Virus record (IMG/VR): IMGVR_UViG_3300042923_000474
Location: 124,001-188,000 of that record
Direction: 5' to 3' (one strand)
DNA: 64,000 bases
In this document: piece after piece, positions 5,587 through 64,000 of the stretch
How the letters are laid out: each line of letters opens with the position of its first letter
How positions within the stretch are numbered: position 1 is the stretch's first letter
Made by a program: the position numbers and the translations under genes
Notes under the pieces: model-generated
Database searches by the model: none
What the model saw: the letters and a program-made list of their open reading frames with translations, nothing else
What the model was told of the DNA's origin: nothing

Positions 5587-8500
5587 ATGGTTCGTTTCGA
5601 AGCATTTAACCGCCGACACGGTTTGATCAGATCTGAGTATCTGAGCATGCCGCGTTTGGCGGACATGGTTAAGGTGGAGTTCCCCGCAGCGTCGGTGATT
5701 CACTATCTGCCTGAGAGCGATGTGGATTGGTGGCCCGAGCCTACGTGGTGGATGATCCGTCAGACCGCTGGCGACATTTGGGTTGAGCATAGCCTTGAGT
5801 TCAATGCGACTCACGGTAAAACCATCCCGGTCACTGGCAGTCCGCAGAACGCTATCCGCAAGTATCACCAACGTTTCCCTACGCTTAAAAAGGTGATCAG
5901 TCAGGACGCAGCCCTGCGCAACGAAATGAGCTGCTTGGTTATCAACCATGCAATCGCCCGTCACTTCCTGAAGTATCAGGGTACTCAGTTCATCGAGTAC
6001 AGCCGCAACCGCAACATCCGTGACAACATCTTCGACGTTATCGCCAAGATGGTTAAGCAGGTAGATCGCCAGCACTTTGTGCCGATCCGCATGCCAACCA
6101 CGTTCCCGGTGTTGAATCAGATCCAAAAGGCTGAGCGTGAAGAGATCCTGACCATTGACTCGGTCAAGCGCTTTACGTCGCTGGAGCATTTGATGTTCCT
6201 GGAGATCTGGCGTTGGTTGGGTGATCCGGGTCCTCGCAAAGGTAAAGGCGGTGAAGACCTTGATCGTGGCGTATTGTCTCAGTTGCTCAAGATTCCAGAA
6301 GACAAGCTCCAACATGTGAACTTCGTGTTCACGGTGCGTGGCAACTGGATGATGTACAACTTGGCGGATCTGGCAGCGCTCAAGAAGATCGAGGCCAACC
6401 CCAAAGGCAAGTGGGAACCTCTGCAGATGCAGAAGCGTTTCCTCAACGCATTGATTCAATTGGTAGAAGCCGGCATCAATGCGGAAAAAAAGCCAGAAGG
6501 GTTGCTCGATCAAGAAGCGCCGGAAGAGCAGTCCAACCAAAAGACAAACCAGGAGATCCAAGCCCACAACGAAGTGATCTTGTCCCAGGTACCGGTGTCG
6601 AAGGAAATCTCGTCGAAGATCGAACGGAACCAGCCATCGACATTGTCGACGATCGGCGTGGACAGCTCCCAAGGAACTACAGTCCTTCCGCGCTCGGTCG
6701 AGGAGGAGGTGGCAGCGAAGGATCAAGCGAGCAAGGAGAAGGAATTATCGGAAGCGTTATCCGCCGCCTCGCAGGGCGCAAAGGTTTCAAGTGATCTGAC
6801 GGACGAGGAAATCGACGCCAACCTTGAAGCACTGGAACGCGTGGAACAGATTCAGCAGGGTGCTGACTTCCATCCGGTGAACCCGAACGCCAACCCATTA
6901 GAGGAAGGCATTCTCTCCCGTGGTCGTGCATTGGCCAAAGACGGGGTGATCTCGGGCGCTGAACTGCGCCGCATTGAGAACCTCGCTGAAGGCTACAAGA
7001 AGATCAAGAACCCCTTCGGTCCTGGTCTGATGCACGAAGCTGCTGTGGTCACGCCTGAAGAGCTGGTGGTTGAGCCTGAGGAGTATCACGTCAAGGGCCC
7101 GATCTTCGATCAGTCCATGCTGTCTTCTTCGGTGCGGGTAGCGAACGCCAAGTACGTCAAGCACACCATGAACAAGGACGTGGTGAACTGCATCCTGAAC
7201 TTCCAGCGTACAGGTTTGGCAGTGACAGGTGTGGAACTGGACAAGTCCAAGTCCATTTTGGGTGAGCAGAACATTCTGTCTATCCGCTGGCAACCAATCG
7301 GTGGGGCTGCTTCTACAAGCCGCATCATCTATCCGGTGGTCAACGAGGAAGGTGTGTTCAAAGCAGGTGGCACCCGCTACCGCATGCGCACTCAGCGTAC
7401 CGACGTACCGATCCGTATTGTGGCCCCTGGCCGAGTGTCTTTGACCAGCTACTATGGCAAGATCAATGTCTCGTTGTCTGAGCGTGAGATCCACAACTAT
7501 GGCCGTTGGTTGACTGACCAGATCAGTGCACTGTCGATGGAGAGCAATGGACCCATCAAGGAGATCCACTTCACCAACGTGTTTGACCGCTCGATCGTAG
7601 CGCCTAAGGCTTACACCCGTTTGGCCCACAGTGTTCACACGATGCAAGTCGGTGACATGAACCTCAACTTCAAGCACAAGGAACGTTTGAACTTCGCTAA
7701 GGAAGCGGAGATCTTTGCACTGGAGCAAGACGGTTCTGTGGTCGTGGGTAAAACCAATCTGGGCCAACTGATCACCATCAACCCTGAGAACCAGTTCGTG
7801 GTCAAAGGGCAGCCTCGTGGGACCATCGAAGAGATCCTGAAACTGGATCAAACCGGTGCACCTCATCAGGTGGCGATGATGCGTCTGCGTGGTCAGTGGG
7901 TTCCGTTGGGCGTGATCATGGCCAGCTACATTGGCCTGTCTGCATTGATCAGTCGAGTAAAGGCTACTGTCCGTCGTGTCAAGGCGGGCGATCGCATGAA
8001 CCTCGAACCCCACGAGTACGCGATTCGTTTCAGCGATGAGTCTCTGGTGTTGGATTCCCGTGAACAGCTGCCGATGTTGCTGCTGTCGGGTTTCCGCTTC
8101 TATCACAAAGAGATCCGTCAGATCAGCGTCTACAGTTTTGACAACAAACCTGCGTACGGCATTCTCCTCGATGCCAAGTCCCGTAACGGGGCGTACACAG
8201 TTGAGTTGGAAATGCTGAACGACCTGTTCGTTGATCCGATGACCCGTGACCTACTCAAGGAGATGAAGGAGCCTACTGAGTGGCAACCTCTGATCATGCG
8301 TGCAGCGCAGCTTCTGCTACAGGACTACGCGCCGGATGAAGTGGACGGGGCGTACATGTTGCTCAAGGGTTACGAGCGTGTACCGGGTGCTGTGTACCGT
8401 GAGCTGGTAGCTGCAACGCGTCAGTACAAGTTGCGTAGCCGTGTGACCAAAGCCTCTATCGACATGAAGCCCACCGCTGTGTGGAATAGCTTTACTGCCG

Positions 8501-13348: not shown

Positions 13349-13387
13349 CATAATCCCCAGCCCTTTGCGGGGCTGGGGACTTATGCC
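13349..13387. terminator. CATAA-hairpin-TTATGCC terminator-like element
   Basis: CATAA TCCCCAGCCC TTTGC GGGGCTGGGGA C TTATGCC. Confidence 0.75.
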
Positions 13388-13398
13388 ATTGAATGATT

Positions 13399-13423
13399 TT
13401 TCAGACCTAGATTATTCATGTGA
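13399..13423 (+). promoter_or_regulatory. Putative phage early promoter (copy 1 of 4)
   Basis: TTTCAGACCTAGATTATTCATGTGA; aligns without gaps to copies at 14958, 35764 and 62954. Confidence 0.65.
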
Positions 13424-57690: not shown

Positions 57691-58391
57691 GTAAGCGCAA
57701 GATTGCCTGTATCCTGGCAACCAACCTCGTCAGCACAATTGGCGATAAAGGTAAGTTGCCCTGGCACCTACCCGATGATTTGGCTCGCTTTAAGCGAATC
57801 ACTTCGGGCAACACCATCGTTATCGGTCGTCGTACTCATGAGAGCTTGCAAGAGTTTCGTGATACGGCTATCCGTGCCCATGACCGCAAGGTTAAGGAAA
57901 CGTGGGAGTGGTTTGACAGTGAGAAGGCGACTCTGGAAACACAGGGTCACTCAGAAGCCAAACTGAAACGCCTGATCAGTAAGAAGGCGTATCAACGCGA
58001 CCTGTCTCTGTCGTTGATCCATCCGGTCTACCCCACCCACAGTTTGCCTAACCGCAAAACCATCGTGGTGTCCAAGACCATGGCGGAAGTCACCGATAAC
58101 CCGAACATCGTTGTCGTGCGGTCGGTAGACGAGGCGATTGTGGTGTGGCGCGCTCGTGGTCAGGGTACGTTGTATTGTGCCGGTGGGGCTGAGCTTTACA
58201 AAGAGTTCTGGCCCCACATGGAGCTGCTGCACCTTACGCTGCTCAACAACAGCACTGAAGGTGACACCAAGTACCCGTTTGAACTCGCAGGTGGCGAATG
58301 GCGGATGCTCGCTCGTCAGATCATGCGCAAGGATGACGGGTCAGGCGAAGTGAGTCACACCTTCTTCACCATGGACCGAAAGGGCGCTTAA
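57687..58391 (+). CDS. folA: Dihydrofolate reductase with a large insertion
   Basis: IG..GKLPWHLPDDLARFK, IGRRTHES, LPNRKTIVVS, AGGAELY, GDTKYP. Confidence 0.9.
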   Translation: MSKRKIACILATNLVSTIGDKGKLPWHLPDDLARFKRITSGNTIVIGRRTHESLQEFRDTAIRAHDRKVKETWEWFDSEKATLETQGHSEAKLKRLISKKAYQRDLSLSLIHPVYPTHSLPNRKTIVVSKTMAEVTDNPNIVVVRSVDEAIVVWRARGQGTLYCAGGAELYKEFWPHMELLHLTLLNNSTEGDTKYPFELAGGEWRMLARQIMRKDDGSGEVSHTFFTMDRKGA

Positions 58392-58393
58392 CA

Positions 58394-58768
58394 ATGAAGC
58401 TTTGGACAATCCAGCTCGGCCAGTGGCGTCTAGCACAAAAGAAAAACATTACAATGGTTAACACCACGGTGATGTCTGGAATGTCCTGGCTTGCTCCTAG
58501 TTGGGACATGGTTAAAGGTCACAAGCTGAAAATCTACACAGATGCTCAGTACACTGCCAAGTTCATCCCCATGATGGTCTTGTCGGAATGTGACCACCGC
58601 GACAAATGGCTAGAACTTGCCAACATGGAAGAGGTAGCCATTGCTTGTTATTGTAAGGCTGGGGCATTTTGTCACCGCATGTTGCTGGTTGAGATACTGC
58701 GGGTATTCTGCGAACGAGAGGGGATTGAGTTTACTTACATGGGTGAACTCAGGAAGGAGGCAGCATGA
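58394..58768 (+). CDS. DUF488-like protein
   Basis: LAPSW...Y..KF...ACYC...FCHR. Confidence 0.7.
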   Translation: MKLWTIQLGQWRLAQKKNITMVNTTVMSGMSWLAPSWDMVKGHKLKIYTDAQYTAKFIPMMVLSECDHRDKWLELANMEEVAIACYCKAGAFCHRMLLVEILRVFCEREGIEFTYMGELRKEAA

Positions 58769-59319: not shown

Positions 59320-59741
59320 AGACCCCCATCAACTCTGTACTGGAAGAGTTTGTTAATGACGTAGGGCTAGCCCTGGGCATGGACTGGCGCTACCAATACC
59401 AACCTTACTACGACGACCCTGGAGCGGGTCTGGAGATTGAGATCTCGGTCTACGGAATCTTTATCTCTTATCCAAATTGTCACAACAGTGAGCGGACCAC
59501 TGTGACTTACGGTATCAGTGACAAGCAGTACCCGGTAGATTGGGAAACCCTTAGGGCAGGGTTGATCTTCTTCTATCGGTTGATTGGGCAGCACGTGTTA
59601 CCAGACTGCGTCACCCTTAAGCCGTGTGGGTTGACCAAGTTTGCGGTGGGCATGACCAAGGCAGTGATGCAAGGCATGCGCGATAGTCGAGTGGTGTTGA
59701 TGTCATTCAAGGATGGGCGTAACGACGTGGCATTCAAGTAA
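59316..59741 (+). CDS. Hypothetical protein
   Basis: ATGA overlap; ends at the bidirectional element 59742-59782. Confidence 0.7.
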   Translation: MKTPINSVLEEFVNDVGLALGMDWRYQYQPYYDDPGAGLEIEISVYGIFISYPNCHNSERTTVTYGISDKQYPVDWETLRAGLIFFYRLIGQHVLPDCVTLKPCGLTKFAVGMTKAVMQGMRDSRVVLMSFKDGRNDVAFK

Positions 59742-59775
59742 GGGCATAATCCCCCACCCGAAGGTGGGGGAGCAC

Positions 59776-60288
59776 TTATGCCGTCTGTGGGTAGTTCAAG
59801 CCACCCAGACTTGTGACGCGTATTACTTCAGACAGTGGGATCAGTTGGGGTTTGATCACTTCTGCCAGAATCTGACCTTTGTAGAAGAGTGAGTCGGGAC
59901 TTGCTTGGAGCATAACCATTGCTTCACCGTCGGTCCACTCAATGGGGCCATCGAGCAGGTCGTCGGTTTCCACGTTGAACCCGTACTTAAGTTGCAGTAA
60001 GGGAATCAGTTGGTGGATGGTTTGAGCGTAGGCTTCTAGTTCCAACGTATCCAGATTGATCTGTGAGAACAACCATTCCAGATCCAACTTATCAAAGGTT
60101 GAGACAACACTACCCGTCCAACGCTTTTGATCTAGCGATGTAATGGTAACGGCGGTATCACCCACCATGTCTGGGTTGTCGTTGATCCTGGGATCGCCTA
60201 CATACAGCAGGTCGTAGGGAATCTCATAGTCACTCGCTACAAAGATCAAGTCGAGCAGAATTTCCTTTTGGGGCCTTAATGTCGACAT
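59776..60288 (-). CDS. Isolated virion fibre-family paralogue
   Basis: [31 protein letters not shown] (close to the 54881 ORF); GAGGA RBS before ATG 60288. Confidence 0.72.
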
Positions 60289-60374
60289 GCGTGTATCCTC
60301 TGTGTGCGCATACCATTCTTCAACTCCCACACCCTAGGGACAATCTATCAGACCACTCAATCTCTGGAGCCACT

Positions 60375-61010
60375 ATGTCTTTCCTTTCCGATATCTCGAT
60401 CCGCGAACGTTGTGTTGCCCAGTTTCTAGGTAACCGACTTGCCAGCCCGATGATCGAACCTTTCTTCGAAGAATCGGTGAGGACCGAAGTTCGCAAGATG
60501 GGCAAATGTGATGTTAACGTTGACGTCTTCTCGTACGGTCTTTCCAGCTACGGTTATGACGTGCGGCTGGCCGATAGTCTGGAGATCTTCACCAACATCA
60601 ACAACGTGAGCGGTGACGCCAAGCGTCCAGCCAGCGGGAATAAGGTCAAGGCCGAGATCCTGACAGACAACTACGGTGGTCGCTTCGCATGGCTGCCCGC
60701 CGGTGGCTTCATGTTGGGTCATACCGTGGAATACTTCCGCATCCCTCGCAACGTCATCGTGATCTGTCTGGGCAAGTCCAGCTATGCTCGCGAAGGTATC
60801 ATCGTCAACGTGACCCCGCTGGAACCGGAATGGGAAGGTCAGGTAGTTATCGAGATCTCCAACACTTCCGGTGTACCGCAGAAGATCTACGTGGACGAAG
60901 GCATCAGTCAGTTCCTGTTCGGCATGGGTGACATGAACTGCGCCGTCTCCTACAAGGACCGTGGTGGCAAATACCAAGGTCAGACTGGTATCACTCACGG
61001 CAAGGTCTAA
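60375..61010 (+). CDS. dcd: dCTP deaminase
   Basis: [45 protein letters not shown]. Confidence 0.93.
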
Positions 61011-61012
61011 TC

Positions 61013-61261
61013 ATGCCTACAATGAAACTGAAGGACCACGTAGCACGGTACATCATCCTGAGTCCGATCAACGGTGAAGAGATCCGGTTTATTCTGGGCG
61101 TTAATGCACCAGAAGACCTGGGTCAGCAGGCAATGAAATGGTACGTGGACAACCCAGAGAGCACTGTCCATGATTTGGCCTTGTGGATGCAGGGTAAGAA
61201 CTGGGGCGTGGTAGCAGATTACGAGGCGGTCTCACTGAGCCGCCCAAGGAAGAAAGCATGA
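61013..61261 (+). CDS. Hypothetical protein
   Basis: Tight packing, 82 aa. Confidence 0.65.
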   Translation: MPTMKLKDHVARYIILSPINGEEIRFILGVNAPEDLGQQAMKWYVDNPESTVHDLALWMQGKNWGVVADYEAVSLSRPRKKA

Positions 61262-61764
61262 GACAAGACGATCCATGGTTGGTATCTCGTTACTCACCGA
61301 TCACGATTGACGGCACCATCTACTTCACCATCGCGGTGGGGTTGCCGGCGGGAACACTGCGTGAACGTAAGTCGCCTCGACTGGTTACTTACGTCGATCC
61401 CAAGACCGGGTGCGAATACACCCGTGAGGCCGACGACATGTTGCAGCGCTGCTGCTTTGCGACCCTCGATCAGGTTCAGGATACACTGGACTATCTCAAG
61501 CCCCACCATTACCGGGCCGTCCAGATCATGGCAGGGCATAAAGACGCCATCCCCGTCACCATGGTTATCAAGTCTTTCCCAGAAGCACGTGGGCAGGCAC
61601 TGAATATTCGGGACCGTGAGCTGATCCGTAAGTACAGCGCGGAACTTGATCCTCATGATCCTGCAAATTCTATTGTAGTGGCGGCGCGCTTGGTGGAAGA
61701 ACACCAGGCCACTCGGTTTATTCGTCTCTCCCGTATTTTGGGCGGGACTATCTGGAGCGTTTGA
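61258..61764 (+). CDS. Hypothetical protein
   Basis: ATGA overlap, AAGGA RBS. Confidence 0.65.
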   Translation: MRQDDPWLVSRYSPITIDGTIYFTIAVGLPAGTLRERKSPRLVTYVDPKTGCEYTREADDMLQRCCFATLDQVQDTLDYLKPHHYRAVQIMAGHKDAIPVTMVIKSFPEARGQALNIRDRELIRKYSAELDPHDPANSIVVAARLVEEHQATRFIRLSRILGGTIWSV

Positions 61765-61765
61765 A

Positions 61766-62023
61766 ATGGTAATGCGTGTTTGGCCAGCCAAGGTCAAGAT
61801 TGAAGTGACCCGCCTTCTGGATCAGGATGTTAAGGTTCCAGGTGATGCTATTATCCATCAGGAACAACTCATCGTCCGTGTAGAGGGCCTGTGTGCAGAT
61901 GCCGTGCTGCGCAAGATCAAGGACCACTACAAGGCCATCGACAAGAACTGCGACGTCAAGATTCTGAGCGGTGTCGACTGGTATCCTGCCGACATGATTG
62001 GCAAGGTTGAATTAAGTTTCTAA
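61766..62023 (+). CDS. Hypothetical protein
   Basis: GGAG RBS, 85 aa. Confidence 0.65.
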   Translation: MVMRVWPAKVKIEVTRLLDQDVKVPGDAIIHQEQLIVRVEGLCADAVLRKIKDHYKAIDKNCDVKILSGVDWYPADMIGKVELSF

Positions 62024-62027
62024 AGGG

Positions 62028-62934
62028 TCTGCTAGATGTATTAGCAGAAAGTATAAGGATCGCATGATGCGACGGATTCTCTTAGGGGGGTCGGGGTTGG
62101 GACTTGCTTTGGCTTTGGCTGCACTGGCACATGCCGTGGAGCCGGTTTGCGAAGGAGTGGAGTTGCCGTCTTTAGAGACGGACGACGTCGCTGGCCTACG
62201 CGTTGCCGCTAGCTCTCCCAACTCTCGATTCCCCGCCTATTCGGCTGTACCTACGAGCAGAGAACTAGGTGCCGCCCCTCTGAACCGCACGAGTCGGGAT
62301 CGTGTATGGACAGCTGGGGTCGCGCAGAGTCCGATGAAGACCTTTTGAACCTAGGGTGCCATGCCGACTTAGCCCACTATCAAATTCGGCACATAAGGAA
62401 AACAAGGAGCATCACACGAACTACTTGATCCGCTGGGCACTAATCCTGCTCGGGTCAGTAGTCGCAGTACCAACTATTCTTACGCGGAATGCTACCGTTC
62501 TCTTGCCATGGACCGTGGAGGTCCCGCAGGTTGAAACGCGTTCTTCGTTTGCACAGTTGGTATGGAAAAGTGTGTTGGCTGGGATCGGCAAACTGCCTAC
62601 CCAAACCCACAGCACTTTCGCGACTGCCTGACAAACTCACAGGCCGCTTAGCCAAAGTAGAGGTTTAAATGGACCTCATTAGGGATGGCTCTCAGCCTAC
62701 CTGTATATCTGCACAGAATCCTGCTCGCGAGGACAAGGCATCCTGAGTTCCCACGGACCCAGACCCTGTACCTTACCCAGGCCTAGGCAGTGACCGCTCG
62801 ACGATACCCCTATTCCATACGCTTCCCTGATCTCTCTAGCACCAGCTGATGCGCTCAGCCGGTTTCACTGACGAGACTTGAGTGGCTATGAGTCTAGTGG
62901 GTATTCGTTGGGTATTCATTTTCCATTTATGCCC
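62028..62934. ncRNA. Candidate large (~0.9 kb) structured non-coding RNA
   Basis: Longest gene-poor stretch in the window, dense in local and long-range helices (see findings). Confidence 0.5.
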
Positions 62935-62953
62935 TTGGGTCCTTTTAAAGAGA

Positions 62954-62978
62954 TTTGAGACCTAGATCATGAACTTGA
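62954..62978 (+). promoter_or_regulatory. Putative phage early promoter (copy 4)
   Basis: TTTGAGACCTAGATCATGAACTTGA; shares AGACCTAGAT with copy 1. Confidence 0.65.
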
Positions 62979-63035
62979 ATAGCTAACAGTAATGTTCGGC
63001 TTTTCCCTAATGTCCCAATACAAGGAACCTGTTTC

Positions 63036-63518
63036 ATGCGTCAGATCGACGAGCAAAACAATGAAGTCGCCATCGAGCGCATCCGGGCCACCTTTGATGC
63101 ATTGGTGGATGGTTTGGGTATTGACGTACCTGGCCTGCTCAGTGGTGAGAAGACCTACCTCGTCTTTCCCGAAGACTTGGTCAAGCCGAGTATCGTGCGC
63201 CCTGCTGAAGGCGACATGGTCTATGGCCTGAACAACAACGACGTGGAAACCATCGGGGTTTTCAATGTCATGGGTTGGGCACTGTTCTCCCGTGATGGTA
63301 GCTTTGAGCTGCCTGATGGTGCAGAAGAAGTTGACCCACTGGATATCTATCCGGTACACGAGCACTACGATTACTGGTACGAGCTGATTGGCAGCTATAT
63401 CCGTACCACCGACATGCCAGACAAAATCGAAGACCCTTACGACGACGAGATCAATGTCGAAGAAGGTTTCGGCGCTGCTGACGTTGACGGTGAACCAGTC
63501 GACCCGGAAGACGCATAA
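63036..63518 (+). CDS. Highly acidic hypothetical protein
   Basis: AAGGA RBS; D/E-rich, 160 aa; first gene after the putative early promoter. Confidence 0.75.
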   Translation: MRQIDEQNNEVAIERIRATFDALVDGLGIDVPGLLSGEKTYLVFPEDLVKPSIVRPAEGDMVYGLNNNDVETIGVFNVMGWALFSRDGSFELPDGAEEVDPLDIYPVHEHYDYWYELIGSYIRTTDMPDKIEDPYDDEINVEEGFGAADVDGEPVDPEDA

Positions 63519-63577
63519 GTCTAGCCGCTTCGATTTATCCTTTTGATGTTTTACCCATTTACTGGGGGAGAGTAACT

Positions 63578-64000
63578 ATGTCCGCTTTTCGTTTGAGTGA
63601 CCGTCGCCTGTTTATCCCAGGTGTTGGAATCATTCCGTATATCCGCTACTTGCGTCTGACCAAAGCTGGTCACCGTCAGTACCTGCTTGTGAAAGGAAAG
63701 CATGTTACACACAGTTTCGGCATCTATGGTGACAATGGGCGTGAGCCTTTGTTGCTCGCCTTGGAAGCCTTGGAAAAGGAGTATGGAGTAATCCGCACAG
63801 GTAGTGTACTGCGGAAGCGGGAACGCAAAGACAAAAAGAATCCAACAGGGATGGTGGGTGTCTTCCGTAAGGAAGGCTATCTGTCACAGCCGTATCAGGT
63901 GACCTGCCCTTACGAGACCAATGAAGCAGTAGGCAGTTTGTCGAAAGCTTACATGGTACGAGAAGCAGCAGTAGCCGAGTATGAACGCAAGAACATACTC
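63578..64000 (+). CDS. Basic protein with an AP2-like DNA-binding signature; truncated by the window end and absent from the ORF track
   Basis: GGGGAG RBS; manual translation MSAFRLSDRRLFIPGVG...RKRERKDKKNPTGMVGVFRK...AYMVREAAVAEYE, open to 64000. Confidence 0.65.
   Translation, partial: MSAFRLSDRRLFIPGVGIIPYIRYLRLTKAGHRQYLLVKGKHVTHSFGIYGDNGREPLLLALEALEKEYGVIRTGSVLRKRERKDKKNPTGMVGVFRKEGYLSQPYQVTCPYETNEAVGSLSKAYMVREAAVAEYERKNIL

What the first reader, a model, noticed from the sequence alone, without database searches (positions are those of the whole stretch)
62028..62934. ~900-nt helix-dense, gene-poor segment: candidate large structured phage RNA
Seen helices: TCTGCTA/TAGCAGA (62028/62042), CCGTCT/AGACGG (62166/62176), ACTAC-T-TGATCCG/CGGGTCA-GTAGT (62420-62462), TACCAACT/AGTTGGTA (62468/62555, enclosing GGACC/GGTCC), TTGGCT/AGCCAA (62575/62650, enclosing three small hairpins), CCAGCTGA/TCAGCCGG (62842/62855). 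Possible long-range pairs: GCCCACTA/TAGTGGGT (62372/62895) and GTATGGAA/TTCCATAC (62560/62813). It ends at TTTATGCCC (62926), the motif that closes transcription units elsewhere, just before an early-promoter copy. The two plus-strand ORFs here have unconvincing composition. Strand is ambiguous: some G-U pairs favour plus, while GAAA/GCAA tetraloops favour minus. Established: large phage-associated ncRNAs of this size class exist (GOLLD, ROOL). Inference: a novel large ncRNA, or possibly a structured origin/packaging element.
Basis: partly seen in the sequence, partly recalled or inferred. Interest (0 to 1): 0.78.

Follow-up and report, generated by a model that had tools for sequence, protein, structure and literature searches.

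The report
Structured phage RNA carrying small ORF
The flagged stretch of this giant-phage genome holds a small secreted-protein gene followed by a new, conserved, heavily folded RNA of about 0.6 kb that also encodes a tiny membrane protein with no normal start codon; it is not a gene-free RNA.

Summary
The window comes from an uncultivated phiKZ-like jumbo phage (IMG/VR contig, 232 kb). The helix-rich region is real, but it is not one gene-free RNA.

- **Two small genes.** Ten related lineages show that 62064-62348 (signal-peptide protein) and 62416-62631 (single-pass membrane protein, about 71 codons) are under protein-level selection. The codon usage of both is atypical.
- **A conserved fold on the + strand, from about 62300 to about 62930.**
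  - A Shine-Dalgarno (SD) hairpin lies upstream of the membrane ORF.
  - A 12-bp clamp encloses two hairpin arms and coincides with that ORF.
  - A non-coding 3' domain of about 290 nt follows, closed by a 22-bp helix and ending at TTTATGCCC.
- **Support for the fold.**
  - 32 of 178 pairs show compensatory change.
  - Column-shuffle z is -8.2 for the ORF part and -5.8 for the 3' domain.
  - The minus strand is much weaker.
  - Two distant relatives keep the same layout with different sequence.
- **RNA evidence.** Three metatranscriptomes hold contigs for 62321-62882 but not for the flanking genes.
- **Database matches.** No Rfam, Pfam or PHROG family matches.
- **Best reading.** This is a stable structured transcript with two roles. 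The fold itself is selected, and it keeps a weakly initiated membrane-protein ORF locked.
- **Still open.** Whether the RNA also acts in trans.

The parts
62028..62048 (+). Conserved hairpin TCTGCTA-GATGTAT-TAGCAGA, directly after the stop of the upstream 85-aa gene. The loop is invariant. It resembles the local promoter-like core (CTAGAT..TAT).
   Evidence: Invariant in the close relatives. A G-U change occurs in L003 and L007. The stem covaries in L024 (UUUCCU/AGGAAA) with the same loop.
62064..62348 (+). ORF94, a small protein with an N-terminal signal peptide or membrane anchor (SD AAGGA 62055-62059). The middle is hypervariable. The last ~45 nt overlap an invariant nucleotide block.
   Evidence: The ORF is open in all relatives at 78-103 aa. 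Synonymous events number 84 against a null of 67.5 +/- 6.8, p = 0.008. Kyte-Doolittle (KD) hydropathy peaks at 2.11 over residues 5-21. There are no family hits.
62276..62317 (+). Hairpin (62276-62292 with 62300-62317) at the 3' end of ORF94. It contains the invariant GTGTATGG.
   Evidence: 13 pairs, 2 with compensatory change. It is kept in L023.
62300..62934 (+). The conserved structured RNA (approximate ends). It has a 5' leader, an ORF-containing two-arm domain and a non-coding 3' domain.
   Evidence: RNAalifold gives 178 pairs, 95.7% of cells paired, and 32 compensatory pairs against 1-10 in slid controls. Consensus energy is -159.8 on + and -122.3 kcal/mol on -. RNA contigs cover 62321-62724, 62335-62486, 62563-62872 and 62563-62882.
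62363..62390 (+). Leader hairpin GCCGA...TCGGC with a conserved loop.
   Evidence: G-C changes to A-U in three sequences. The form in L023 is GUCGG/CCGAC.
62397..62431 (+). Hairpin that pairs part of the Shine-Dalgarno sequence (AAGGAG, 62404-62409) and the TTG at 62425. Its 17-nt loop carries GAG...CACGAAC.
   Evidence: 87-92% of cells paired, one compensatory pair. Equivalent SD-pairing hairpins with other sequences occur in L023 and L009.
62416..62631 (+). ORF70, about 71 codons encoding a single-pass membrane protein. No canonical start codon is conserved. In the window there is ACG at 62416, 6 nt after the SD, and TTG at 62425. The stop TGA is at 62629-62631.
   Evidence: 66 of 134 substitution events are synonymous against a null of 39.2 +/- 5.3, with 0 stop-creating events against 4.7 expected. 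The other five frames show no signal. The frame is open in L023 and L024 with the membrane (TM) segment and C-terminal motif kept. KD hydropathy is 2.08 over residues 7-23.
62454..62632 (+). 12-bp clamp helix (62454-62465 with 62620-62632, including the ORF70 stop codon). It closes two hairpin arms, 62467-62563 and 62567-62618.
   Evidence: It is invariant or shows G-U variants in the close set. It is rebuilt with other bases in L023 and in L024, where it is UGAUCAUC/GAUGAUCA. Column-shuffle z is -8.15 on + and -1.87 on -.
62633..62659 (+). Nearly invariant linker CAAACTCACAGGCCGC(A/T)T(T/A)GCC just after the stop codon. It is predicted mostly unpaired, or paired with 62785-62795.
   Evidence: It is conserved even in L024. 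The window copy has two uncompensated changes, at 62648 and 62650.
62660..62677 (+). Hairpin GAGGTTT-AAAT-GGACCTC. The loop and most of the stem are invariant in all ten lineages.
   Evidence: G-C changes to A-U at one pair. It is present in L023 and L024.
62683..62762 (+). Series of variable-sequence hairpins: 62683-62697, 62702-62723 and 62743-62762.
   Evidence: 4 of 5 and 3 of 7 pairs are compensatory. UUCG and UACG tetraloops appear on the + strand in the distant clade.
62796..62913 (+). Terminal branched domain. A 22-bp closing helix (62796-62819 with 62887-62913) encloses a variable hairpin at 62842-62862. Relatives carry an extra 38-nt hairpin inserted at 62817/62820, which the window lacks.
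   Evidence: 5 compensatory pairs in the closing helix and 5 in the inserted hairpin. The hairpin is rebuilt with different sequence in L007, L019 and L011 and in RNA run X18. The L023 helix is CAGUCACACCCC/GGGGUGUUGGCUG.
62926..62934 (+). TTTATGCCC, a unit-closing (terminator-type) motif and the likely 3' end of the RNA.
   Evidence: TTATGCC follows stable hairpins at 13381, 22217/22255, 37742, 42982, 54823, 59749 and 59776. It is conserved in the relatives.
62952..62970 (+). Promoter-like motif TTTGAGACCTAGATCATGA of the next transcription unit. It is not part of the RNA.
   Evidence: Other copies lie at 13400, 14901 and 35765. Relatives conserve it as CAGACCTAAAGTATC.

Best explanation
**What it is.** The flagged segment is one short + strand transcription unit of a phiKZ-like jumbo phage.
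- It opens with a conserved hairpin or promoter-like element at 62028.
- It then encodes a small, fast-evolving signal-peptide protein, ORF94.
- It continues into a conserved, heavily folded RNA of about 0.6 kb (about 62300-62930).
- It ends at the phage's hairpin-plus-TTATGCC closing signal.

**What is shown.**
- The folded RNA is a new RNA family.
- It is also a message: a 12-bp clamp and two hairpin arms coincide with an ORF of about 71 codons for a single-pass membrane protein.
- The ORF's Shine-Dalgarno sequence is partly paired.
- No canonical start codon is conserved for the ORF.
- A non-coding, multi-hairpin 3' domain of about 290 nt follows, closed by a 22-bp helix.

**Proposed mechanism (inferred).**
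- The fold is the main selected feature.
- It keeps initiation and elongation on the small ORF rare or conditional.
- Together with the closed 3' domain, it shields the RNA from nucleases.
- The folded part therefore outlasts the ORF94 part and accumulates.

The layout and the selection pattern are shown. The ends, the stability and the translational control are inferred.
For: **Coding.**
- ORF70 has 66 of 134 events synonymous against a null of 39.2 +/- 5.3, with 0 stop-creating events against 4.7 expected.
- ORF94 has 84 synonymous events against 67.5 +/- 6.8.
- The 3' domain and all minus-strand frames show no signal.
- Frame-specific BLOSUM excess is z = 2.2-3.8.

**Structure.**
- 178 pairs, 95.7% of cells paired.
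- 32 compensatory pairs, against 20.7 +/- 2.3 in shuffles and 1-10 in slid controls.
- The 3' domain alone has 21 of 77 compensatory pairs.
- Column-shuffle z is -8.15 for the ORF part and -5.75 for the 3' domain on +, against -1.9 and -2.2 on -.
- Coding controls mostly fall between +0.9 and -3.
- Consensus energy is -159.8 on + and -122.3 kcal/mol on -.

**Distant relatives.**
- L023 aligned by a covariance model (CM) shows 19 pairs changed on both sides and only 6 broken.
- Independent minimum-free-energy (MFE) folds of L023 and L024 give the same layout, including a clamp over the stop codon.

**Other support.**
- Four-fold degenerate sites of ORF70 differ less (0.30) than those of neighbouring genes (0.43-0.61).
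- RNA contigs in three metatranscriptomes cover 62321-62882 only, and further RNA runs hold the stretch.
- The TTATGCC closing motif is documented.
- The phage carries phiKZ-type RNA polymerase genes.
Against: - No canonical start codon is conserved for ORF70. ACG lies 6 nt after the SD in nine lineages, but L024 has ACA there.
- Gene callers never called ORF70.
- A protein language model gives ORF70 low recognition.
- Its codon usage is atypical.
- The RNA ends come only from assembled contigs, whose ends are not transcript ends.
- Flanks may be missing from RNA runs partly because they are too divergent to be laid at 85% likeness. In run X13 another nearby piece has similar depth.
- The 5'-3' long-range helices are invariant and so remain untested.
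- A few ordinary windows also give strong structure scores: 58370-58658 at z = -5.3 and 59700-59915 at z = -8.9.
- Most compensatory changes lie on one deep branch.
Confidence: 0.55

Rival explanations
1. **Trans-acting large structured RNA.** The fold, or the 3' domain alone, works as an RNA in its own right. It could be a scaffold, a protein sponge or a base-pairing regulator of host or phage targets. The small ORF would then be secondary, as in true dual-function RNAs of the RNAIII type.
For: - The structure is conserved more deeply than the protein. In L023 the middle of ORF70 is replaced while a hairpin is kept at the same place.
- The linker 62633-62659 and the loop of 62660-62677 are invariant even in L024.
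- The 3' part has higher depth than the ORF part in X18 (34.5 against 11.8) and is the only part found in X20.
- The weak, non-canonical start fits an RNA that is mostly untranslated.
Against: - No target, partner or known motif was found. Rfam gave nothing.
- GGA motifs are not enriched.
- There are no paralogues.
- All features are equally explained by cis control and stabilisation.
Confidence: 0.3
2. **Ordinary bicistronic message.** The high nucleotide conservation would come from recent recombination or homing-endonuclease-driven gene conversion between co-infecting relatives. The structure would be incidental.
For: - Identity is mosaic. L012 is 99-100% identical over 62029-63279 but only 54-60% in the adjacent gene.
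- GIY-YIG endonuclease genes sit directly downstream in L009/L010 and L011.
- Single-sequence MFE is no stronger than in coding neighbours.
Against: - Gene conversion does not create compensatory pairs.
- Helices are rebuilt with different bases in L023 and L024, whose neighbouring protein is only 46-52% identical.
- The + strand is strongly favoured over the - strand.
Confidence: 0.08
3. **DNA-level element.** The hairpins would act in DNA, as a replication origin, packaging site or endonuclease target.
For: - The inverted repeats are dense, and a homing hotspot lies next to them.
- The loop of the 62028 hairpin is conserved in sequence.
Against: - G-U cells number 172 against 19 A-C cells.
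- The minus-strand consensus is 37 kcal/mol weaker, with z of only about -2.
- The stretch is recovered from RNA libraries.
- There are no iterons or AT-rich unwinding region. GC content is 0.51-0.59.
Confidence: 0.04

Closest known systems
hok-type type I toxin mRNAs (hok/sok of plasmid R1 and relatives)
   Same: Both are compact, highly folded, long-lived messages of a few hundred nucleotides. Both encode a small single-pass membrane protein. In both, the ribosome-binding region is occluded by structure, and 5'-3' pairing is predicted.
   Different: There is no Pfam HOK_GEF match. There is no overlapping leader ORF. No antisense RNA is known. The element sits in a lytic jumbo phage among nucleotide-metabolism genes. 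The ORF lacks a canonical start. The 3' domain is much larger.
Dual-function RNAs such as Staphylococcus RNAIII (hld) or SgrS/SgrT
   Same: Both are abundant structured RNAs of several hundred nucleotides that also carry a small ORF. In both, the structure extends well beyond the ORF.
   Different: No trans targets are known here, and the sequence and fold are unrelated. The ORF lies inside the core fold rather than beside it.
Large structured phage-associated ncRNAs (GOLLD, ROOL)
   Same: The size class is similar, the association is with phages, and there are many covarying helices.
   Different: There is no match to any Rfam model even at E <= 10. This RNA contains a selected protein-coding ORF. 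It is restricted to one small clade of phiKZ-like phages.
Small RNAs reported in phiKZ and 201phi2-1 by ONT-cappable-seq (PMC11512511)
   Same: These are conserved structured RNAs in RNAP-encoding jumbo phages, found next to conserved genes.
   Different: Those are under 250 nt, mostly 5'UTR-derived products of premature termination. This one is about 0.6 kb, has an embedded ORF and a 3' domain, and lies at another locus.

Membership tests
GOLLD / ROOL / OLE and any other Rfam family | Match to the family covariance model | tested here: not met
   cmscan of the window at gathering threshold gave 0 hits. The region at E <= 10 gave 0, and relatives gave 0.
tmRNA | tRNA-like domain plus a tag reading frame | tested here: not met
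   ARAGORN found no tRNA or tmRNA in the window, and there is no Rfam hit. The ORF of about 71 codons has an SD and is far longer than a tag.
Group I / II self-splicing intron | Catalytic core recognised by Rfam models, and interruption of a host gene | tested here: not met
   There are no Intron_gpI or gpII hits. No exon continuity exists, because the next gene has its own promoter-like motif and SD. The GIY-YIG genes in relatives are free-standing.
hok/sok-type type I toxin-antitoxin | Small hydrophobic toxin ORF of the Hok/Gef family | tested here: not met
   A small TM ORF is present, but no Pfam, NCBIfam or PADLOC family matches.
hok/sok-type type I toxin-antitoxin | Fold-back pairing of the 5' and 3' ends that silences translation | tested here: inconclusive
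   The predicted helices 62318-62323/62790-62795 and 62354-62358/62774-62778 are invariant or show only G-U variants. An alternative pairing is predicted when the 3' domain is folded alone.
hok/sok-type type I toxin-antitoxin | Cis-encoded antisense RNA | not testable with these tools
   The RNA contigs have no direction. The sigma-70 scan found nothing, and this phage probably uses its own polymerases.
Dual-function (coding plus regulatory) RNA | Conserved structure beyond what the ORF needs, together with a translated ORF | tested here: inconclusive
   The structure is met. Translation is inferred only from substitution patterns. Trans activity was not tested.
Phage holin / lysis cassette | Small TM protein encoded next to an endolysin or spanin | tested here: not met
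   A TM segment is present. The neighbours, however, are dcd, thymidylate kinase, DHFR and thymidylate synthase, and there is no PHROG hit.
This phage's hairpin + TTATGCC unit-closing signal | A stable helix followed within a few nucleotides by TTATGCC | tested here: met
   The motif lies at 62927, 13 nt after the closing helix. Eight other copies follow hairpins at 0-5 nt.

The most novel reading that the evidence does not exclude
The RNA of about 0.6 kb would be a new class of large structured jumbo-phage RNA with a function of its own. It might bind a host or phage protein, or act during the passage of messages out of the phage compartment. It has also kept a small membrane-protein ORF that is initiated at a non-AUG/GUG/UUG codon. 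It would then be a true dual-function RNA, in which fold and reading frame co-evolve over the same nucleotides.
Probability: 0.3. Interest if true: 0.82.

Novelty: new variant of a known kind. Interest (0 to 1): 0.62.

Why it matters
Few conserved RNA structures are known in RNA-polymerase-encoding jumbo phages, and the reported ones are short (PMC11512511).

This fold spans about 600 nt and is maintained across lineages whose neighbouring proteins are only 46-52% identical. It is superimposed on a protein-coding frame that lacks any conserved canonical start codon. It therefore offers a natural case for three questions:
- how RNA structure and coding constrain the same bases;
- how translation can start at unusual codons in phage infection;
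- how a phage message is made long-lived.

It also shows that small genes with atypical composition are missed by gene callers in these genomes. The unit is compact, which makes it easy to test in any cultured relative.

Tried and rejected
**Searches that found nothing.**
- Rfam at gathering threshold and at E <= 10, on the window and on relatives.
- ARAGORN.
- blastn against phage GenBank records.
- Pfam, PHROGs, NCBIfam and PADLOC for both ORFs.
- An exhaustive HMMER profile search for ORF70 returned only a spurious repeat protein, P0009.
- The ESM Atlas gave no useful neighbour.
- Sigma-70 promoter and canonical terminator scans.
- A self-BLAST for paralogues.

**Searches that stayed within the clade.**
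- DNA pattern scans of IMG/VR, metagenome and genome collections returned only the same clade. The one exception was a chance hit in Photobacterium, L020.
- Pseudomonas phage Noxifer has no comparable gap near dcd.

**Ideas considered and dropped.**
- A +1 frameshift at UUU-UGA (62343-62348) would join ORF94 to the ORF70 frame in the window. It is not conserved: L003 has a 1-nt insertion and a stop.
- Stop-codon read-through past the ORF70 stop. The downstream frame is open for 46 codons in some relatives but closed in the window clade, and there is no coding signal.
- GTGTATGG as a phiKZ-type TATG late promoter. The motif is not enriched in the window, so this remains a guess.
- I first read TTATGCCC as a promoter. 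The hairpin contexts argue for a closing signal instead.
- GGA (Rsm/Csr-type) motif enrichment is absent.

Full report
**Source and context**

The window is part of IMGVR_UViG_3300042923_000474, a 231.7-kb viral contig. It encodes phiKZ-type multisubunit RNA polymerase beta-like subunits. Its dCTP deaminase is 58% identical to that of Pseudomonas phage Noxifer and 54% to that of PaBG. No phage record in GenBank is similar at the DNA level.

The flagged segment lies in a nucleotide-metabolism cluster with thymidylate kinase, DHFR, dcd and thymidylate synthase. It is the only stretch of about 1 kb in the window without ordinary coding composition. An apparent second gap near 29-30.7 kb is a 571-aa ORF.

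**The observation**

- Codon-usage scores of the two + strand ORFs are -0.055 and -0.088, against 0.262 +/- 0.121 for the training genes.
- The 907 nt fold better than dinucleotide shuffles: z = -4.14 on + and -3.51 on -.
- In 400-nt windows the region reaches -3.0 and -2.7, against a local background of +0.5 to -3.0.
- Single-sequence MFEs equal those of neighbouring genes.
- Thermodynamics is therefore suggestive only.
- Rfam gives nothing at gathering threshold or at E <= 10, in the window or in relatives. ARAGORN finds no tRNA or tmRNA.

**Relatives**

- Homologues of the flanking 168-aa and 160-aa proteins led to syntenic loci.
- The close set is L012, L003-5, L007/8, L006, L009/10 and L011.
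- L015/L019 and L017 were found by DNA pattern search.
- Two distant relatives are L023 and L024. Their 160-aa homologue is 52% and 46% identical.
- All have the same layout: the 85-aa gene, a small ORF, about 700 nt without a called gene, then the 160-aa gene.
- Identity is mosaic. In the distant clade, 62280-62680 is 70-88% identical while the flanking genes are about 60% and the middle of ORF94 is 28-50%.

**Coding**

Substitution events were placed on a tree by parsimony and compared with events re-dealt at random.

| Region | Synonymous events | Null | Stop-creating events |
|---|---|---|---|
| ORF70 frame (62416-62631) | 66 of 134 | 39.2 +/- 5.3 (p < 0.001) | 0 observed, 4.7 expected (p = 0.008) |
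| ORF94 | 84 | 67.5 +/- 6.8 (p = 0.008) | 2 observed, 6.8 expected |

- The other two + frames of these regions, the 3' domain (62632-62920) and the minus frames tested (62349-62920) show nothing.
- An RNAcode-like score gives z = 2.2-3.8 in the ORF frames only.
- ORF94 has a signal-peptide-like N-terminus. ORF70 has one hydrophobic segment.
- The ORF70 frame is open in L023, with the C-terminal WKSVLxxIGK motif kept. It is also open in L024.
- No canonical start is conserved. An invariant AGGAG is followed after 6 nt by ACG in nine lineages. Codons downstream of it are clearly under coding selection in lineages that have no ATG, GTG or TTG there. L024 has ACA at that place and a CTG nearby. 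The start codon is therefore unresolved.
- Neither protein has relatives outside this clade.

**Structure**

*Close set.*
- RNAalifold on eight sequences (window 62276-62940) predicts 178 pairs.
- 95.7% of cells are paired.
- 32 pairs change on both sides, against 20.7 +/- 2.3 in shuffles (0 of 500 reach the observed value) and 1-10 in slid controls.
- The non-coding 3' domain alone has 77 pairs, of which 21 are compensatory.

*Strand.*
- The + strand consensus is 37 kcal/mol better than the - strand.
- G-U cells outnumber A-C cells by 172 to 19, with the caveat that the structure was predicted on +.
- UUCG and UACG tetraloops appear on +.

*Column-shuffle z-scores.*

| Region | + strand | - strand |
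|---|---|---|
| ORF70 part | -8.15 | -1.9 |
| 3' domain | -5.75 | -2.2 |
| Coding controls | mostly +0.9 to -3 | |
| 59700-59915 (convergent terminators) | -8.9 | |
| 58370-58658 (unexplained) | -5.3 | |

*Control caveat.* Control windows treated the same way give 3-16 'compensatory' pairs per 289 nt, against 18 for the 3' domain. That count alone is therefore not decisive.

*The decisive support comes from the distant relatives.*
- A covariance model built from window 62430-62640 aligns L023 over its full length.
- Of 66 pairs, 41 are paired in L023. Of these, 19 are changed on both sides.
- Six pairs are broken.
- 21 pairs are replaced by L023's own long hairpin at the same place.
- Independent MFE folds of L023 and L024 reproduce the SD hairpin, the clamp over the stop codon, two arms, the invariant GAGGUUUAAAUGGACCUC hairpin, variable hairpins and the terminal closing helix.
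- Peripheral hairpins are rebuilt with unrelated sequences.
- A 38-nt hairpin is present in most relatives and in RNA runs X18 and X20 but absent from the window. It covaries.
- Four-fold degenerate sites of ORF70 differ less (0.30) than those of neighbouring genes (0.43-0.61).

**RNA evidence**

| Metatranscriptome | Contigs |
|---|---|
| X13 | 62321-62724 |
| X18 | 62335-62486 and 62563-62872 |
| X20 | 62563-62729 and 62709-62882 |

- These three runs hold nothing for ORF94 or the flanking genes. The exceptions are cross-hits of cellular dcd genes and two small pieces in X13.
- More RNA-type runs hold the stretch.
- Three caveats apply. Contigs have no direction. Their ends are not transcript ends. 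Divergent flanks could fail the 85% likeness filter.

**Ends**

- TTATGCC follows GC-rich UUCG hairpins at eight other sites, including convergent gene ends.
- The 5' end is unknown. Conservation of synonymous sites begins near 62280-62300, and the RNA contigs start at 62321 and 62335.
- There are two possibilities. One is an own start, for example at the invariant GTGTATGG, by analogy with the phiKZ TATG late promoter (PMC7598289). That motif is not enriched here. The other is processing of a longer ORF94 transcript.

**Interpretation**

- The anatomy is well supported. There are two small membrane or secreted protein genes and a new structured RNA that overlaps the second gene.
- The mechanism is inferred. 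The fold limits translation of a weakly initiated ORF and stabilises the RNA. Whether it also acts in trans is open.
- A DNA element and an incidental structure are both unlikely, for the strand-asymmetry and covariation reasons given above.

Noticed in passing
window 13381, 22217/22255, 37742, 42982, 54823(-), 59749(-)/59776(+), 62927: A recurrent signal: a GC-rich hairpin, often with a UUCG loop, followed within 0-5 nt by TTATGCC(C). It occurs on both strands and back-to-back between convergent genes. It looks like this phage's terminator type and has no U-tract.
   Followed up: partly
window 13400, 14901, 35765, 62955; L024:1597-1612: Promoter-like motif TT(C/G)AGACCTA(G/A)A(T/G).AT upstream of genes. 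In relatives it is conserved as CAGACCTAAAGTATC.
   Followed up: partly
L009:7726-8295, L010:2706-3275, L011:7747-8262, L011:4892-5554: Free-standing GIY-YIG (I-TevI-like) and NUMOD3 homing-endonuclease genes are inserted in some relatives. One group sits directly downstream of the structured RNA. Another sits next to dcd in L011. This marks the locus as a homing hotspot.
   Followed up: partly
window 60279-63900 versus L012 and L003: Sharp mosaic of identity. L012 is 99-100% identical over 62029-63279 but only 54-60% over 61779-61979. L003 is 89-98% identical over 61729-62879 and 57-77% outside. This indicates recent recombination between related phages.
   Followed up: partly
window 63370-63658: The alignment window around the 63519-63578 intergenic spacer has a high structure-conservation index of 0.70. 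Metatranscriptome X13 holds a contig at 63496-63660 with a depth similar to that of the main RNA.
   Followed up: no
window 58370-58658: A window counted as a coding control gave a strong conserved-structure score (column-shuffle z = -5.3 on + and -3.9 on -). This is unexplained.
   Followed up: no
window 62343-62348: ORF94 ends in UUU-UGA. A +1 slip there would enter the ORF70 frame, which is open from 62348 in the window. This is not conserved, because L003 has a 1-nt insertion and an in-frame TAA.
   Followed up: yes
window 62648, 62650 and 62817/62820: The window's own copy carries two uncompensated changes in the otherwise invariant linker (CTTAGCC where relatives have CATTGCC). It also lacks the 38-nt hairpin present in most relatives.
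   Followed up: partly
sequencing runs X4-X10, X14-X17, X26-X30: Runs labelled with single organisms (coded A-I) hold 20-73% of the sampled words of this stretch. Some of these are RNA-type runs. Their nature, whether phage isolates, infected cultures or host-associated samples, could not be checked.
   Followed up: no
L020 (Photobacterium marinum contig33, 7696-7717): An exact 22-mer match to the conserved linker, with no other similarity. It is taken as chance.
   Followed up: yes
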